Source: Octopus sinensis (lineage: Eukaryota). From it: a DNA stretch of 64,000 bases. Below, in pieces: positions 3,277 through 64,000 of the stretch. The DNA lies in assembly GCF_006345805.1 (NCBI RefSeq), contig NC_043010.1, forward strand, positions 24,738,001 through 24,802,000. The letters are read 5' to 3'. Position numbers and translations under genes: made by a program. The number at the start of each line of letters is the position of its first letter. Position 1 is the first letter of the stretch. Under the pieces are notes generated by a model. That model searched no databases, was not told the origin of the DNA, and worked only from the letters and a program-made list of their open reading frames with translations.

Positions 3277-3396
3277 ATGTTAAAACCAATGTTAAATATC
3301 AGAATTTTCTTGTTTCCATTTTTGGTACTTCTCGTGATAGTATTTTCTGTCAAAGAAACCATTGCAGTGCCTGTCGGCAAAAAAAGTGTTTGTGAG
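3277..3396 (+). CDS. Gene A coding exon 1: signal peptide (MLKPMLNIRIFLFPFLVLLVIVFSVKETIAVPVGKKSVCE)
   Basis: ATG at 3277, hydrophobic core, and a strong donor GAG|GTAAGC (phase 0). It is 120 nt, the same as the paralogous exon at 48643, and both end K-S-[VI]-C-E. An acceptor-like ttttaag ends at 3257, suggesting an upstream UTR exon. Confidence 0.88.
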
Positions 3397-4372
3397 GTAA
3401 GCAATTTTTTTTAACTTTTCATTAACCTCAATTCGATATGAACGATTATTCTTAATGTTGGACGACAGTGCCGCATATCAAACCACCCCATATGGTATCC
3501 AAAGGAATTTCATTCTATTAATCAGTGAAATTTATCTCGCCATGAAGAACGCCATAACCGTTAACTCGTCGATTTGGCGTTTCATTTCTCTGTCTTTTCT
3601 ATTTCTTCAAAAACCATCTATTTCTCCTTCTCTAACTTAGAATAACTTCATCTAAAACCTGCCTGAAGTATTAGAGTGAATAGAGCATTGTGAGTGAATT
3701 GCACTTTGTGTCTTTGTTTTTTGGTAGAGTCATTTTGTCGTTCAAAATGCACATGCATTGTTATATTTGTATTTATACTAAAATTATCCGTTACACATTT
3801 ATGATTTGATCATTAACATTGGATTTCTAGAACAAAACTCTTGCAAAGAACCTTCAACAAAAGAATATCTTAAATTTGCTTAGTCTTGTTTAAGTAAGAC
3901 GTTGTGCTCCTGAGATGAGTAGAAACGAAATATCGACATCGATATCAGGAAATCTGAGTGAAAAAGCTAATTTGTATTCAAGTGTTCCGATTGTGTCTAT
4001 GCCGTCTTTTTTCTTCATTTTAGGCATCTAGAACTACGGTATCAAACTTGTCTTTCCAACGTATTCTTTGCGATTTAGTAAGAAACTTTTGTTTCGGGTA
4101 TTCTTTAACCCAGGTTACAACTTTTGTTATATTTGAACCCTTTATATCCCTTTATTTTTATTTCATTTGTAAATATATATTTTTTTGTGTGTGGATTTCA
4201 TTAAGGAATAAGCAATTCCAATCACGCAGGTTCATGAGCATCCTCTCTCATTTCTTCTGCATATAACGGATCTGAAGCTCACTACTGTAATAGAAACACA
4301 CAGTTCAAACTAGGACCCAAAGAGATGTGTACACATACGCTGTGATGTCACCATAAGGGTGTCTGACACAAC

Positions 4373-5200
4373 CGAATTAAAGGTGATCGGCATTGTTCTA
4401 AAGGATTACGAAATTGTGAGAGGGACAAAAATTAACATGGACAAATAGAGAGACTGGTCCGTGTCAATTGCCTTCCATCTCTGAACATGGAGAGGCAAAC
4501 TTGAGCAACGTGGGCCGCTTGACAGTCAGAGTGGCTAAACTGCTTGGGACCTGGTTCAGTCCGATCTTGACATCCAGTTGGGTAAAGATAGCTGTGGAGT
4601 TGCGAGAAAAATGCAGTTCTTCGTTGAGCAGTTGCCAAAACTGGGCGCCTGGCATCTGGAATCTTATCAGACGCTCACAGCTCTCTACTAGTGAGGCAAT
4701 ACGGGTTGGGAGGGCTTTCAAATTTACAACTTATAAAGGAAAGAACAATGACGGACTTGATGGGAAAACTCTGGTCGTCACCGAGTTTGTCTAGCCAGCT
4801 CATACTAAAGTCTTTGGCCCCGGGTGCAATAGATGACTGCAGAAATCCTTACCTTGACAGTGCACCTGACAACATTACTGGTTCGAGATTAACTCTACTG
4901 ATACGGAAATGCAGTCAGCCGGAAATGTCTGGGATACGCGGAAACTGACGAAATCGTTTTGCACGCAGTATTTCAGTGTCCCAGCATTACTGACATGCAG
5001 TAGTATTATAAGTACAAACTTCATGTTGCATGCAGAAGAGATCTGGCTATCGAATGGACTCTCTATAAAGATCGCTCCGCCGCCTTGTTTTGATCGAAGT
5101 GAGAAGTATTCACAAAACTGGATACGGTGGTCGATAAAATGATCAAGTGCTGCGATGCATGTAATCGACTGCACTAACCGTCAAAAATGTATGCCCTGTA
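4373..5200 (+). mobile_element. Degenerate L1/Tx1-like LINE ORF2 fragment (post-RT and C-terminal zinc region)
   Basis: Translation (LGTWFSPIL...W...) matches the FGPDLQ..NW..V...W..RKLSLKGRA motif of the copy at 24750-25475. Many stops and frameshifts. Confidence 0.6.
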
Positions 5201-5244
5201 CCTATATTAGAAGTTAATATAATTTTCAAGGAGGCCAATTGGAG

Positions 5245-5800
5245 GAACCGTTAGCTCGCTGGGCGAAATTCTTCACGGTACTTCGTTCAGCTCTACGTTC
5301 CGTCGAGGTCGACTTCGTCTTTCATCGTCGATATAATAGAACCAGTCGACCACTGGGATCTATGTGATTGACTATCCTCCTCCTCCTCTTCCTCCAAATT
5401 TCCAGTCTTGTTCCTTATACTAGAAAGAGCTGGTAGAATCGTTAGCACGGTAAGCGAAATGCTTAGCGGGATTTTGTCCGTCTTCACGTTCTGAGTTCGA
5501 ATTCTGCCGAGGCCGACTTTGCCTTTCATCCTTTCGGGGTCGATTAAAATACGTAACAGTTATGCACTGGGGTCGATCTAATCGACTTAATCCCCCTCCC
5601 CCACGCTGCCCTTGTGGCAAGAATTCGAACTCATTATTATTTTCGCCTCCCACCACCAACCTTTATATACTGAATTCAAATTCCACCAAGACCAAACTTT
5701 GTCTTTTATCTTTTCTGAGTCGATTAAAATAAAGTACCAGACGATAGATTCGACCAACCACATTCTCTCAAATATCGATAGCCTTGTGCCCAAGTCGAAT
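5245..5800 (+). mobile_element. Cluster of SINE family 2 copies (5245-5370, 5425-5620, degenerate 5650-5800)
   Basis: Motif gagctggcagaatcgttagcac...gttctgagttcaaattccgccgaggtcgactttgcctttcatcc... Confidence 0.8.
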
Positions 5801-6170
5801 TTGATCATATTTACACCATTTATCCGTGCCCACATAGAAAGGTCGGAATATTATTCAGTGGACATAACAGACGATTCGATCGCATCCGTACATAAATCGG
5901 ATCTGGCAAGGACAGAGCAAAGGAATTGGTCTAATTAATCCGGTTAACTAATCTATATTCGGTATTATCATCACGCATTATTTTACTTTTGTAATTATTT
6001 CTAGCAAAGGATTAACCCCATGCAGTTAAAATCAAACTTTTATTTCTGATTTTAGTCCAGAGCTTTTGGGCCATTGCTGACTTTCACTCTGGCTTCATTT
6101 CTTTCTGTGGAATCCTGCGAAGCATTGGCCGGGAACGGTGTTGCTTTTCAGTAAAGTTTGGAGTGAATTC

Positions 6171-61315: not shown

Positions 61316-61379
61316 GAAGTCAATTATATTTTTAGGGTGGAATTCGAAGTAGATAAAACCACAAATAACAGCAGCTCTG

Positions 61380-62880
61380 TCATGTTTCCAATCCCGCAAT
61401 CAGCCTTCTACTAGTGTTTATAGTATATATCTATGGTAAAGGTGGTGTCCTTTTTAATAACCATTATCTCTAGGAATGGTAATTTGGTACTACTCATCTC
61501 CTTTGTAAATTGGAGAGATATTAAACTCTTTCAAAGTATTTAGAGATTCTGTCCAGATTATGAAACAATTGTCAAAGTATTTCTTCCATGCCTTTTCAAT
61601 ATACTTTCTAAGTTCAGGGCTATAGTTTTCCTCTACTTCTTGGTAGACTTGTTGCTCTAAATATCCCATTACAGAGTTCGCGTAAACGGGGGAAAACCTC
61701 GTTCCCATCACTGTGTCGTTAATTTGGATGTAATTTTTTTCCATTGATGAAGAATGTATAGTGCTCCATAAGCCTGACTGTGTCTAATATAACTGGCACT
61801 GTGAATCTGTTGGGGATCACTTCTCTATGTTTTTCTACCCAGTATTTAATCACCTTTATTCCTAAATCATGTAGAATATTGGTGTAACTAAGTAGAAGTG
61901 AATTTGTTTCAGTTCTTTTGAGAAGATGGGACAGGAAGTCGATGTCATCCCGAATGCAAGTGGTATATAAGTAGATAGTGGTTTCAAAACAATGTCAATA
62001 AGATTGCTTAGACGTTGGGTAGGGCATGCTGGACCAGTTGTAATAGGTCTAAGTTTTAAGTCTTTTGGATGCAATAATTTTATGTACTCATTTTTTAGTT
62101 CTTTTACTGCATGCTGAATATCTTTTGATTTATGTATTTTCGGTAAGCTATAGAATTTGCTGGGTTTTGGCTCGAAATTAGTGAGGTAGTCTCTTTCATT
62201 ATCGGTAAGTGAGTTGTGGTGTTTTGAAACCAGGTTGTTGATCTTCTTCATGACGTGGTGGTCTATATTAGAAGGTATTTCACAATATAAGGTTGTGTCC
62301 CTCAGTTGGCCCTCAGCCAAATCCTTGTAGCATTCTACATCCATAATAACAATTGCATCCTCTTTATCTGTTTGTTTAATTATTATTGTTTGATCGTTTT
62401 GTATATGTTTAAGTGCAGACATTTCGGATTTGTTAATATTTGGCCTAACATTAGTATTGTCTCTAAGGAGAAATTTAGACAAGATATCAATGTATTGGTC
62501 AAGATAGTTATTTCTTCCTTTTAGTGGGGCAAAATTTGATTTATTCTTTACTAGGGATTCATCAATCTGATTAGTTTTATTTGTGAATAATTTTACAAGT
62601 CGTAACTTACAACAGAATTTTTGAATATCCTCCTTTAGTTCTTGGTGGTTGACTGTTGATGTAAATTTCAGTTCTTTTGACATAAGTTGGATTTCATCAT
62701 TGTCAAGATCTCTTTTGGATAAATTAACTATTTTAGGATCTATATGTTGAGTAGTTTGGGGTATGTTACCTCTTGGATTTTATCTTTCTCCATGTCTGTT
62801 TTCGTTCGGTTTCCTTGTATGTCTCCACTATCATGTTTTTGCTACCAACTTTGACCCTCTCAAATCCTAATTTTTATTTT
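61380..62880 (-). mobile_element. Penelope-like retroelement RT remnant
   Basis: SKELKFT, IIKQTDK..AIVIMD, FYSLPKIHK, LKLRPI..GP.CPT.RLS, YIQINDTVMGT...YAN..MGYLE and WKKYFDNCFIIW. Confidence 0.88.
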
Positions 62881-63084
62881 GGTTTGCGGGAGCAACTGCA
62901 TTCGAAGACTCATATTGTCGTTCAGTGCTCGAAATGAGGAGCAGATGGACAGCCGACACCTGATTAAGGGTCGTTATATTACTTGTCCTGTTTTCCATTT
63001 GTTTCTCTCGTTGCTTATATATTCAACTCTTTTGTTTTCGCATTTCATGTTGTTTATGGTTTGTGACGTCCTGTACCCACATAT

Positions 63085-63290
63085 ACATATATATATATAT
63101 ATGTGTGTATGTATGTATATATATATATATATATATATATATATATATATATATATATATATATATATTATATATATATATATATATACATACATACAAC
63201 AAGCAGTCGCATATATATGTATGTACATATATATTTGCATACATACATACCTACGTATATACATATATGTATGTATGTATTATGTGTATT
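63085..63290. repeat. (TA)n/(TATG)n microsatellite
   Basis: Direct reading. Confidence 0.9.
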
Positions 63291-63335
63291 AGCACTAACG
63301 TTGTGTTTCTTTCTCATACGCTTCATCCAATGTAG

Positions 63336-64000
63336 CAAATGGAGAAAAGGTTGGCTGTTCAAAAGTCCCTGCAATCAAGATTTCAGATAGACCGGACAAA
63401 ACTAATCTAATCAACGTAACGGTGACGGTGCCAAGAAGGGATTCTGCAGCCATGGAATGCTATGCCAATGAAGCCTTTGTAAACATTAGTGGTGTTGGCG
63501 ACTTCTGTGATAGTCACTGTCGACTTGGAAAATGTCCTCGTAAATGGTGTGTATGTAACAGAACAGAAGACAAGGGACAAGATTTCAAATGTGTGGTCAA
63601 TAAGTATTATGAGAATATCGATGATCTCTTGACCTGGTGCTATGCACTTTGCGCTACAACACAGTATTGTCCGACACAGTATTGCATTTGCAGTGGCACA
63701 CCACGTGAAATAGCAAATACAGATTTCATGGGACCTGAAGAATTAAAAGAAATTACTTGCAGATTGACTAAGGGTTACGAAGGGATTCCAGGATTGTTAA
63801 AATGGTGCTATCGTTTGTGCAAAGGGCGATATTGTCCACGGACACATTGTATATGCAGTGTCGTTTCAGATACAACACCGGTACCAAAGCCCATACTAAG
63901 ATGTTCAGTGACGAATCGTTACAAACGGCTCCCAGGTGTTTTGAGTTGGTGCTATGTAATATGTGAAAGAGGATACTGCCCAAAATCTTTTTGCATTTGC
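63336..64000 (+). CDS. Gene B coding exon 3 (runs off the window): end of LPMO-like domain and at least four six-Cys modules
   Basis: Acceptor ccaatgtag|CA (phase 1), then 221 open codons to the window end with no stop. Modules include [18 protein letters not shown] and [18 protein letters not shown]. It is absent from the ORF track, probably because no stop lies inside the window. Confidence 0.92.

What the first reader, a model, noticed from the sequence alone, without database searches (positions are those of the whole stretch)
3277..64000. Hidden tandem pair of secreted LPMO-fold plus Cys-module genes
Seen in sequence: six exons splice with canonical GT-AG sites into two + strand paralogs. 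Their first two coding exons are identical in size (120 and 289 nt) and the intron phases match (0, 1). Both encode a signal peptide, a domain with six conserved Cys, and tandem 33-aa Cys modules; gene A is 353 aa if it ends at TAA 16263. Exon 2 aligns without gaps between the genes, yet the proteins are strongly diverged, which implies an old duplication with both frames kept open. Established: the ICP/TQEC/LPxxxxCxHCVLQW motifs characterise AA15 LPMOs (chitin-binding type 4 fold). Inference: a lineage-specific family of secreted chitin- or polysaccharide-associated proteins, perhaps in beak, radula, sucker cuticle, gut lining or egg coat.
Basis: partly seen in the sequence, partly recalled or inferred. 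Interest (0 to 1): 0.9.

Follow-up and report, generated by a model that had tools for sequence, protein, structure and literature searches.

The report
Octopus mucins with dead LPMO domain
The two spliced genes are real: they belong to a five-gene array in Octopus sinensis that encodes secreted, mucin-like proteins. These proteins are built on a cut-down copy of a chitin-cleaving copper enzyme (AA15 LPMO) that has lost its copper site, so they probably bind rather than cut.

Summary
All six exons, the GT-AG sites, the 120/289-nt exon sizes, intron phases 0 and 1, the 353-aa gene A and the 33-aa six-Cys modules are in the sequence.

The AA15 link is real. A profile of the paralogs hits the Thermobia AA15 structure 5msz (E 5e-8) and the octopus's own canonical AA15 genes (hhalign 97.7%). 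Intron 2 sits at the identical codon position. A confident AlphaFold model finds 5msz as its only significant PDB match.

Three corrections:
1. This is not a pair. It is a five-gene head-to-tail array with about 50 kb spacing. Orthologs with the same introns exist in Argonauta hians.
2. The domain is a truncated AA15 core. His1, the N-terminal ~65 residues and the second His are all missing. It cannot form the copper histidine brace, so it is a pseudo-LPMO.
3. Gene B runs past the window into about 15 kb of TTTP repeat, which makes it a giant mucin.

The Cys module matches the six-Cys repeat pattern already described behind insect group I LPMO15-1 and is widespread in protostomes. Genes C and E are annotated as 'uncharacterized'. 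Gene A, and B's N-terminal part (searched only among proteins of about 250-800 aa), are absent from public protein sets. Function (chitin or glycan binding in a secreted matrix) is inferred, and expression is untested.

The parts
3277..3396 (+). Gene A exon 1 (120 nt): ATG, hydrophobic signal-like N-terminus, ends ..KSVCE|gtaagc, phase 0
   Evidence: The only ATG-to-GT exon within 20 kb upstream of exon 2 that has a hydrophobic start and ends in C-E.
10171..10459 (+). Gene A exon 2 (289 nt): core of the AA15-derived beta-sandwich (ICP, TQEC, LPxxxxCxHCVVQW). The donor sits at W + 4 codons + 1 nt.
15613..16265 (+). Gene A exon 3: last strand of the N-domain (KNYAVC), three Cys modules, a short PTS linker, and the TAA stop at 16263-16265
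15756..15986 (+). Gene A Cys modules 1 and 2 (aa 185-217 and 229-261)
   Evidence: In the AlphaFold model the pLDDT is 81-95 and each module is strand + helix (CxxxC) + strand (CxC).
16002..16124 (+). Gene A Pro/Thr-rich (TTTP) linker, about 40 aa
16128..16226 (+). Gene A Cys module 3 (aa 309-341)
48643..48762 (+). Gene B exon 1 (120 nt): signal-like N-terminus, ends ..KSICE|gtaagt, phase 0
   Evidence: The Argonauta ortholog's exon 1 ends ICQ|gtaagg, also phase 0.
49583..49871 (+). Gene B exon 2 (289 nt): AA15-derived core
   Evidence: The Argonauta ortholog's exon 2 ends at the same position and phase.
63336..64000 (+). Gene B exon 3, the part inside the window: end of the N-domain plus Cys modules 1-4 (63458-63556, 63590-63691, 63758-63856, 63902-64000). 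The exon continues beyond the window with a fifth module, an Arg/Ile/Thr-rich stretch and about 15 kb of TTTP repeat.
   Evidence: P0004 (91% identical fragment) and P0005 (Argonauta, 53%) are the only relatives found.

Best explanation
**What it is.** Genes A and B are two of five head-to-tail paralogs on Octopus sinensis scaffold C14. Each encodes a secreted modular glycoprotein with four parts:
1. A signal peptide.
2. A beta-sandwich of about 125 residues that descends from the AA15 LPMO catalytic domain. It has lost the N-terminal ~65 residues (His1 and the L2 surface loop), the second copper-binding His, and four of the ten cysteines. It therefore cannot hold copper in a histidine brace and is a non-catalytic 'pseudo-LPMO'.
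3. Two to five copies of a 33-residue six-Cys module. The same module follows canonical AA15 domains across protostomes, and its pattern matches the insect group I LPMO15-1 repeat.
4. A Pro/Thr-rich stretch. It is about 40 residues in A and thousands of residues in B and D, which are gel-type mucins.

**How it most likely works (inferred).** The dead AA15 core and the Cys modules act as binding units for chitin or another secreted glycan or matrix. The heavily O-glycosylated stalk supplies hydration, spacing and protease resistance. The protein would coat or cross-link a chitin-containing surface or mucus layer rather than cleave it.

**Shown versus inferred.** Shown: the gene models, the descent from AA15, the loss of catalytic residues, purifying selection, and an array older than the Octopus-Argonauta split. 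Inferred: secretion, glycosylation, the ligand and the tissue.
For: **Gene models and conservation**
- Splice sites and open frames are as described.
- There are five paralogs. Exon 2 is 289 nt in A-D and 283 nt in E.
- My three-exon model of E is identical to XP_029645183.1. C's exons 1-2 equal XP_036364626.1.
- The Argonauta hians ortholog of B has the same intron positions and phases.
- dN/dS is about 0.11 against Argonauta and 0.19-0.35 between paralogs. Codon-position identity runs 2 > 1 > 3.

**Descent from AA15**
- phmmer of A against 5msz gives E 0.007. A profile of the five paralogs gives E 5.4e-8 over chain residues 68-188.
- hhalign against canonical AA15 sequences gives 97.7%, E 2e-12.
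- Intron 2 lies at W + 4 codons + 1 nt in both the family and the canonical octopus AA15 gene L007. Intron 1 is phase 0 just after the homologous Cys.
- The AlphaFold model has mean pLDDT 80, with 87-95 in the N-domain. Its only Foldseek PDB hit below E 1e-3 is 5msz.

**Loss of catalysis**
- No His follows the signal peptide.
- The His91 position is Phe or Ala.
- No exon resembling the AA15 N-terminus exists anywhere in the window.
- Canonical exon 1 is 165 nt and exon 2 is 373 nt, against 120 and 289 nt here.
- Pfam LPMO_10 matches the canonical octopus gene (76 bits) but not A or B.

**The Cys module**
- 67 of 153 module-bearing relatives carry a canonical AA15 domain.
- Taxa include gastropods, bivalves, a brachiopod, annelids, a spider and a mantis shrimp.
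- The insect LPMO15-1 repeat pattern is C-X15-C-X3-C-X6-9-C-X4-C-X1-C (PMC9156745).

**Mucin region**
- The 12-nt unit AACAACCACACC repeats at least 705 times. Beyond the modules the protein is 56-69% Thr and 18-23% Pro.
- There are 2-7 N-glycosylation sequons per protein in the first 420 residues.
Against: - No expression or splicing data could be reached. Gene A and B's N-terminal part are absent from every protein set searched, so transcription of these two copies is unproven.
- The AlphaFold alignment contained canonical AA15 proteins, which biases the model towards that fold. The Foldseek TM-score is modest (0.41 on the target).
- No ligand test was possible. The deleted L2 region and Tyr24/Tyr166 form the substrate surface in TdAA15A, so chitin binding by the remnant core is not assured.
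- The signal peptide was judged by eye and hydrophobicity only.
- B's reading frame slips within the repeat, so its true 3' end is unknown.
Confidence: 0.62

Rival explanations
1. The proteins are mucosal defence factors. On this reading the six-Cys modules are defensin-like cysteine-stabilised alpha/beta units (antimicrobial, or blockers of channels or proteases) displayed on a mucin stalk. The AA15 remnant would be only a scaffold or a lectin for microbial or fungal chitin.
For: - The module has the CxxxC...CxC arrangement. The model places CxxxC in a helix and CxC in a strand.
- The only matches of a module profile in PDB and Pfam are CS-alpha/beta peptides, and they are weak and non-significant: E 0.59 and 5.8 in PDB, E 0.03-0.8 for PF14866 in Pfam.
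- Tandem expansion, fast divergence and long branches are typical of immune gene families.
Against: - All matches to CS-alpha/beta families are above E 0.01 and below Pfam cut-offs.
- The module's regular partner across protostomes is a chitin-active AA15 domain. In insects that protein acts in cuticle turnover (PMC9156745).
- The loops C3-x4-C4-x4-C5 are much shorter than in defensins.
Confidence: 0.15
2. A and B are decaying or unexpressed gene copies, relics of AA15 duplication. On this reading they have no function of their own and their frames are open by recent origin or by chance.
For: - The catalytic residues and the N-terminal third of the domain are lost.
- A and B's N-terminal part are not in public protein sets.
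- The public model of C reads through a donor into the intron.
- The introns are full of transposon remnants.
Against: - Synonymous sites between paralogs are saturated, yet all five copies keep open frames, canonical splice sites, six N-domain Cys and every module Cys.
- B has an Argonauta ortholog with the same structure and dN/dS of about 0.11.
- E is a RefSeq protein model identical to my splice model.
Confidence: 0.08
3. They are still oxidative enzymes. On this reading they use a different metal site or an N-terminus supplied by an unrecognised exon or by processing.
For: - The axial Tyr (Tyr184 in TdAA15A) aligns with a Tyr in A, D and E.
- Paralog C has PDH one residue out of register with the canonical A-P-H motif.
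Against: - tblastn with a canonical AA15 sequence finds nothing resembling residues 1-58 anywhere in the window.
- The same short N-terminus is present in the RefSeq model of E and in both Argonauta proteins.
- His91 is replaced in A, B, D and E.
- The L2 loop that builds the flat catalytic face is deleted (canonical exon 2 is 373 nt, against 289 nt here).
Confidence: 0.04

Closest known systems
Group I AA15 LPMOs (insect LPMO15-1, e.g. TcLPMO15-1; PMC9156745) and their lophotrochozoan counterparts, including the octopus's own genes on scaffold C9 (L006, L007)
   Same: - Signal peptide, then an AA15-type domain, then C-terminal six-Cys repeats (C-x15-C-x3-C-x(4-9)-C-x4-C-x-C).
- Intron 2 at the identical position and phase.
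- The shared motifs ICP, T/QEC, LPxxxxCxxCVxQW and EEY/FxGC.
   Different: - His1, about 65 N-terminal residues, His91 and four Cys are missing.
- The Pfam LPMO_10 model no longer matches.
- Module number is raised to as many as 5.
- Some members have very long PTS mucin domains.
- The family forms a five-gene tandem array with long branches.
TdAA15A from Thermobia domestica (PDB 5msz; PMC5823890)
   Same: - It is the best and only significant match by both sequence profile (E 5.4e-8) and fold (Foldseek E 1.3e-4, 114 columns).
- The beta-sandwich core is shared.
- The position of Tyr184 is kept in A, D and E.
   Different: - TdAA15A is a single-domain copper enzyme with the His1/His91 brace, Ala89, five disulfides and the substrate-face residues Tyr24 and Tyr166.
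- None of the brace residues is present here, and only six Cys remain.
LPMO-like non-enzymes such as fungal X325/Bim1 proteins (from my own knowledge, not tested here)
   Same: The LPMO fold is reused for a non-degradative role in a secreted or surface protein.
   Different: - X325 proteins keep a copper histidine brace and act in copper handling.
- The octopod family has no brace at all and comes from a different LPMO family (AA15).
Chitin-binding mucins of invertebrate gut linings, e.g. insect intestinal mucins with CBM14 domains plus PTS regions (from my own knowledge)
   Same: Small Cys-rich putative carbohydrate-binding modules alternate with long Thr/Pro-rich O-glycosylation regions in a secreted protein.
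   Different: - The modules here are not CBM14. There is no Pfam match, and the insect paper states the repeat is unrelated to CBM14.
- The N-terminal domain is an AA15 remnant.

Membership tests
AA15 LPMO (CAZy auxiliary activity family 15) | N-terminal His (His1) exposed by signal-peptide cleavage | tested here: not met
   - The sequence after the hydrophobic leader is VPVGKKSVCE in A and NIEYGDS in B.
- No exon resembling the canonical HGR(L/M)MDP N-terminus exists in the window.
- The canonical octopus gene L007 does have it.
AA15 LPMO (CAZy auxiliary activity family 15) | Second brace histidine (His91 in TdAA15A), with Ala89 two residues before it | tested here: not met
   - In the phmmer alignment to 5msz, Ala89-Pro90-His91 pair with Asn-Pro-Ala in B.
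- The residue nine positions before the ICP Cys is Phe in A, Tyr in D, and not His in E.
- C has a His one position out of register.
AA15 LPMO (CAZy auxiliary activity family 15) | Axial Tyr or Phe (Tyr184) before the last conserved Cys | tested here: met
   - The profile alignment pairs EEY(184)RNC of 5msz with KEYVGC.
- The Tyr is present in A (KNYAVC), D and E.
- B has Val at this position.
AA15 LPMO (CAZy auxiliary activity family 15) | Ten conserved Cys forming five disulfides (PMC5823890) | tested here: not met
   Six Cys are conserved. The CGxCGD pair and the CxGC pair of the late loop are deleted.
AA15 LPMO (CAZy auxiliary activity family 15) | Significant sequence similarity to the family and its curated model (Pfam PF03067 LPMO_10) | tested here: inconclusive
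   - Pfam gives no match at E up to 10 for A or B, while the canonical octopus gene scores 76 bits.
- Against this, the five-paralog profile hits 5msz at E 5.4e-8 and hhalign gives 97.7%.
- Conclusion: homologous, but outside the curated model.
AA15 LPMO (CAZy auxiliary activity family 15) | LPMO beta-sandwich fold with a flat substrate face built by the L2 region | tested here: inconclusive
   - The sandwich core is predicted with pLDDT 87-95 and matches 5msz.
- The roughly 65-residue N-terminal/L2 part is absent.
- The model's alignment included canonical AA15 sequences.
AA15 LPMO (CAZy auxiliary activity family 15) | Copper-dependent oxidative cleavage of chitin or cellulose | not testable with these tools
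   This needs recombinant protein, EPR and product analysis.
Group I LPMO15-1 architecture | C-terminal six-Cys repeats C-X15-C-X3-C-X6-9-C-X4-C-X1-C following the AA15 domain | tested here: met
   - All 13 33-residue modules of A-E fit C-x15-C-x3-C-x4-C-x4-C-x-C. The loop between the third and fourth Cys is shorter than in insects.
- The same module follows canonical AA15 domains in 67 of 153 relatives, including a spider and a mantis shrimp.
- No insect LPMO15-1 sequence was aligned to the octopus module, so the link to insects rests on the published pattern alone.
Secreted gel-type mucin | Long tandem Pro/Thr/Ser-rich repeat domain in a secreted protein | tested here: met
   - B has at least 705 copies of a 12-nt unit. 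A+C content exceeds 0.9 from about 64.6 to 79 kb in window-relative coordinates.
- B is 56% Thr and 18% Pro beyond the modules. D is similar.
- A has only about 40 such residues.
- O-glycosylation itself cannot be tested here.
Cysteine-stabilised alpha/beta (defensin-like) motif | CxxxC in a helix bonded to CxC in a strand, with six Cys paired C1-C4, C2-C5, C3-C6 | tested here: inconclusive
   - The spacing and predicted secondary structure fit.
- Sequence matches to CS-alpha/beta families are all non-significant.
- Disulfide pairing could not be read from the model.

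The most novel reading that the evidence does not exclude
Octopods have turned an AA15 lytic polysaccharide monooxygenase into a family of non-catalytic 'pseudo-LPMO' mucins. A copper-free, N-terminally truncated AA15 sandwich plus multiplied six-Cys modules would serve as chitin or glycan anchors for giant O-glycosylated stalks. 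The family expanded in a tandem array before Octopus and Argonauta split. To my knowledge this would be the first animal LPMO-derived pseudoenzyme family. It would also offer a natural experiment on what the LPMO core and the uncharacterised LPMO15-1 Cys repeat bind without catalysis.
Probability: 0.45. Interest if true: 0.62.

Novelty: new variant of a known kind. Interest (0 to 1): 0.5.

Why it matters
- AA15 LPMOs are the only animal LPMOs. In insects they are essential for cuticle turnover. Their C-terminal six-Cys repeat has no known function or structure.
- A lineage that kept that repeat, multiplied it, and stripped the enzyme of its copper site points to a binding role for both parts. 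It also offers compact constructs for testing that role.
- For cephalopod biology, this adds a fast-evolving family of very large secreted mucins. Two of its members appear to be missing from current protein sets, so they would be invisible in proteomic searches of beak, radula, gut lining, sucker cuticle, skin mucus or egg coats.
- For annotation, it shows that long-intron, repeat-rich genes of this type are being missed or truncated. Examples are the read-through model of C and the fragmentary ortholog of B.

Tried and rejected
1. **Single-sequence AlphaFold of A residues 1-266.** Mean pLDDT was 41, so the model was unusable.
2. **Word-based homolog search with full-length A.** It was swamped by TTTP words and returned only P0001. 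Restricting it to residues 30-265 found nothing.
3. **Representatives search with spliced rows for B-E.** A MAFFT alignment with whole exon 3 rows misaligned. Exon-wise fragments worked.
4. **Chance ORFs.** Rejected on paralog E-values and the codon-position pattern.
5. **A missed His1 exon in the long introns.** Rejected: tblastn with a canonical AA15 sequence gives no hit to its first ~58 residues, and the orthologs share the short N-terminus.
6. **Intron-level collinearity between A and B.** Only dispersed repeats match, which is consistent with an old duplication.
7. **Monophyly of the His-less octopod family, and its relation to a similar His-less nemertean protein (Lineus P0017).** The tree backbone is unresolved and the branches are very long. 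One origin is neither shown nor excluded.
8. **Rfam and tRNA scans of the window.** Nothing found.
9. **Literature searches.** Searches for the two RefSeq loci, for cephalopod LPMOs and for His-less AA15 proteins found nothing relevant.
10. **Module profile against PDB and Pfam.** Only non-significant matches to CS-alpha/beta peptides.

Full report
**Observation**

- Gene A has exons 3277-3396, 10171-10459 and 15613-16262, with the TAA stop at 16263-16265. It encodes 353 aa.
- Gene B has exons 48643-48762, 49583-49871 and 63336 onward.
- The donors are GTAAGC, GTAAAT, GTAAGT and GTAAGT. Each acceptor is a pyrimidine tract followed by AG.
- The first two exons are 120 and 289 nt in both genes, and the intron phases are 0 and 1.
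- A systematic scan for AG...GT pairs that keep the frame found one solution for A's exon 2. For B it found four, of which only the 289-nt one has a GTAAGT donor.

The two exon 2 sequences align without gaps at 36% aa identity. A six-frame search of the whole 2.72-Gb genome with A's exon 2 finds B's at E 9.4e-18. Identity by codon position is 0.58/0.65/0.44. Synonymous differences are saturated (pS 0.73) while pN is 0.37. Outside the exons, only dispersed repeats match between the two loci.

**Where the window lies and what surrounds it**

The window is G000:C14:24,738,001-24,802,000. The genome is Octopus sinensis. My spliced model of a downstream paralog is letter-for-letter XP_029645183.1 (LOC115219204), recorded on a contig of 68,403,164 bp, which is the length of C14.

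The 'pair' is part of a head-to-tail array of five + strand paralogs about 50 kb apart. The three outside the window, in window-relative coordinates, are:
- C: exon 2 at 99740-100028.
- D: exon 1 at 140193-140321, exon 2 at 149106-149394, exon 3 from 165633.
- E: exons at 188746-188856, 199848-200130 and 202441-202859.

Exon 2 is 289 nt in A-D and 283 nt in E. Exon 1 ends in Cys-Glu|GT in A, B, D and E. Nothing else in the window looks like a gene. The large ORFs are transposon remnants: a Mos1-type HTH sits in A's intron 2, and two LINE reverse-transcriptase copies sit in B's intron 2. There are no Rfam or tRNA hits.

**Gene B is much larger than the window shows**

Exon 3 of B stays open to at least window-relative 68188. 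After a fifth Cys module and an Arg/Ile/Thr-rich stretch, it enters a tandem array of the 12-nt unit AACAACCACACC (TTTP), with at least 705 copies. A+C content stays above 0.9 from about 64.6 kb to about 79 kb. The Arg/Ile/Thr-rich stretch is also present in a 91%-identical UniParc fragment, P0004.

The frame slips inside the repeat, so the true end of B is unknown. D has a similar mucin domain. Beyond the modules, B and D are 56-69% Thr and 18-23% Pro. A carries only about 40 residues of this kind.

**Relation to AA15 LPMOs**

Sequence evidence:
- Pfam gives no match for A or B.
- phmmer against PDB sequences finds one relative, the Thermobia domestica AA15 structure 5msz, at E 0.007 for A and 0.079 for B.
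- A profile of the five paralog N-domains raises this to E 5.4e-8 over chain residues 68-188.
- A profile-profile comparison with canonical AA15 sequences gives 97.7% probability, E 2e-12.

Canonical relatives:
- The octopus keeps canonical AA15 genes on scaffold C9 (L006, L007) and C7 (L010). They start HGRLMDP... and carry the NHLGWFEF motif. The L007 model matches Pfam LPMO_10 at 76 bits.
- In L007, intron 1 is phase 0 three codons after the CGG cysteine. Intron 2 is phase 1, exactly at Trp + 4 codons + 1 nt.
- The window genes have a phase-0 intron one codon after their exon 1 Cys, and a phase-1 intron at the same Trp + 4 codons + 1 nt. This is strong independent evidence of common descent.

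Predicted structure:
- An AlphaFold model of A residues 31-266, built with an 81-row alignment, has mean pLDDT 80.
- The N-domain scores 87-95 and forms an eight-strand sandwich.
- Its only Foldseek PDB hit below E 1e-3 is 5msz (E 1.3e-4, probability 1.00, 114 columns). The rest are generic Ig-like sandwiches.
- Caveat: the alignment contained canonical AA15 proteins.

**What has been lost**

According to PMC5823890, AA15 is defined by His1 and His91 (the copper histidine brace), Ala89, the axial Tyr184, and ten Cys in five disulfides. In the family:
- The sequence aligns only from TdAA15A residue 68 onward.
- No His follows the leader peptide.
- The His91 position is Phe in A and Ala in B, with no His in register in D or E.
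- Canonical exon 1 is 165 nt and exon 2 is 373 nt, against 120 and 289 nt here. About 43 codons are therefore missing, on top of sequence divergence.
- tblastn with a canonical protein finds no trace of its first ~58 residues anywhere in the window.
- The RefSeq model of E and both Argonauta proteins share the short N-terminus.

The axial Tyr is retained in A, D and E. The domain is therefore an AA15-derived sandwich that cannot form the brace. It is homologous to AA15 but fails the family's catalytic membership tests.

**The Cys module**

All 13 33-residue modules of A-E fit C-x5-Y/F-x3-PG-x3-WC-x2-NC-x2-G-x-CP-x2-HC-x-C. The module is not lineage-specific.
- A full HMMER scan of 1.84 billion representative proteins with an exon-wise profile gave 389 hits at E up to 1e-3.
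- Of the 153 proteins examined (the 150 best hits plus P0152, P0153 and P0001), 67 carry a canonical AA15 domain in front of the modules.
- Named sources include Biomphalaria, Littorina, Nucella, Batillaria, Mizuhopecten, Tegillarca, Potamilus, Lingula, Paralvinella, Owenia, the spider Argiope and the mantis shrimp Oratosquilla.
- Some hits are module-only proteins; one has about 20 modules (P0002).
- The insect literature describes two six-Cys repeats, C-X15-C-X3-C-X6-9-C-X4-C-X1-C, behind the AA15 domain of group I LPMO15-1. It notes they are unrelated to CBM14 and of unknown function (PMC9156745). The octopus module matches this pattern apart from a shorter middle loop. No insect sequence was aligned here, so the match to insects rests on the pattern.
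- In the model, each module is a short strand at C1, a helix carrying C2xxxC3 and a strand carrying C5xC6, with pLDDT 81-95. That is the arrangement of cysteine-stabilised alpha/beta peptides.
- A module profile finds only such peptides in PDB and Pfam, but non-significantly. I treat this as a lead, not a finding.

**Age, constraint and annotation status**

- Argonauta hians has at least two His-less relatives on one contig: GAB1603675.1 and GAB1603672.1.
- The first is 53-57% identical to B and groups with it in a tree (84/86). A groups with D (96/90). The backbone is unresolved.
- The Argonauta gene has a 123-nt exon 1 ending ICQ|gtaagg in phase 0. Exon 2 is 298 nt and ends at Trp + 4 codons + 1 nt. 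Exon 3 has a cag acceptor.
- Over 309 aligned codons, pN is 0.27 and pS is 0.74 (saturated). dN/dS is about 0.11 and codon-position identity is 0.69/0.75/0.45.
- The array therefore predates the Octopus-Argonauta split and has been under purifying selection since.
- C and E are RefSeq 'uncharacterized' proteins. C's model reads through the exon 2 donor into the intron.
- Gene A gave no hit in the 5.8-billion-protein collection and no exact record. No hit corresponding to A or D appears among the top hits of the representatives scan.
- A search with B's first 456 residues, limited to proteins of about 250-800 aa, found only P0004 and the Argonauta protein.
Even so, C and E were returned, so 'hidden' is a fair description for A and probably for B.

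**Interpretation**

These are secreted modular glycoproteins (shown for the hydrophobic leader, the N-glycosylation sequons and the PTS repeats; inferred for secretion itself). They reuse a copper-free AA15 core and its accompanying Cys repeats, several of them on giant mucin stalks.

The most likely mechanism is non-enzymatic binding or cross-linking of chitin or another secreted glycan or matrix. The rival readings are a mucosal-defence role for defensin-like modules, silent relics, and residual enzyme activity. They are weighed in the report sections.

No expression, ligand or tissue evidence could be obtained with these tools.

**Novelty**

The parts are known: AA15, the LPMO15-1 Cys repeat and PTS mucin domains. 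The combination is new as far as I could find: a brace-less, truncated AA15 domain expanded as a tandem mucin family in octopods. Literature searches found nothing on it. I rate it a new variant of a known kind, of moderate interest.

Noticed in passing
window 12230-13498 (- strand), inside intron 2 of gene A: A frame-broken mariner/Mos1-type transposase remnant. The ORF at 12671-13498 matches HTH_48 (E 3e-9), and adjacent ORFs continue it in other frames.
   Followed up: partly
window 50852-56939 (- strand), and 58473-58907 and 61862-62779 (- strand), inside intron 2 of gene B: Two adjacent non-LTR retrotransposon copies (RVT_1 at E 3e-30 and 2e-13, plus zf-RVT), with further RT-like ORFs nearby. 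They account for much of the 13.5-kb intron.
   Followed up: partly
window about 1486-1992, 7808-8581, 11433-11936, 16878-17475, 18842-19340, 39741-40187, 42802-43224, 50046-50618, 60367-60601: A dispersed repeat of about 200-600 bp, 74-88% identical between copies, often lies next to (CA)n or (TATG)n-type microsatellites. It produces spurious long ORFs that share the peptide ..SFRLPNPLTRLWSARGYSRRHLPKVP... It looks like a SINE family but gave no tRNA or Rfam match.
   Followed up: partly
G000:C9:5,655,610-5,658,840 (L007) and 5,675,065-5,678,301 (L006); G000:C7:79,230,358-79,233,552 (L010): These are canonical AA15 LPMO genes of the same octopus, with an intact HGRLMDP N-terminus and NH motif. 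The two on C9 lie 19 kb apart in tandem. L007 ends in one copy of the same six-Cys module.
   Followed up: partly
Gene B, window-relative 64171-64600 (protein residues about 425-500), beyond the window in L013: An Arg/Ile/Thr-rich stretch (..RRRRTIIIRRRITRIIRITFIRT..) lies between the last Cys module and the TTTP array. It reads like a frame-shifted version of the repeat, yet it is kept in the same frame in a 91%-identical fragment from another source (P0004).
   Followed up: no
P0017 (XP_064622860.1, Lineus longissimus): This nemertean protein has three of the same Cys modules behind a short AA15-like domain. It also lacks the N-terminal His region and matches only the octopod-family profile, not the canonical one. 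It may be an independent loss of the brace, but the tree could not resolve this.
   Followed up: partly
L037 14498-22723 (Argonauta hians contig BAAFZT010000032.1): The gene next to the Argonauta ortholog of B is annotated with a 7868-residue product. It shares short repeat matches with P0005's tail, so it may be another giant mucin of the same cluster.
   Followed up: no
window-relative about 105830-105960 (G000:C14 about 24,843,830), just upstream of paralog C's exon 3: An assembly gap (a run of N) sits immediately before the Cys-module exon of paralog C. C's N-domain C-terminus (the EYxGC strand) is therefore not represented and its model is incomplete.
   Followed up: no
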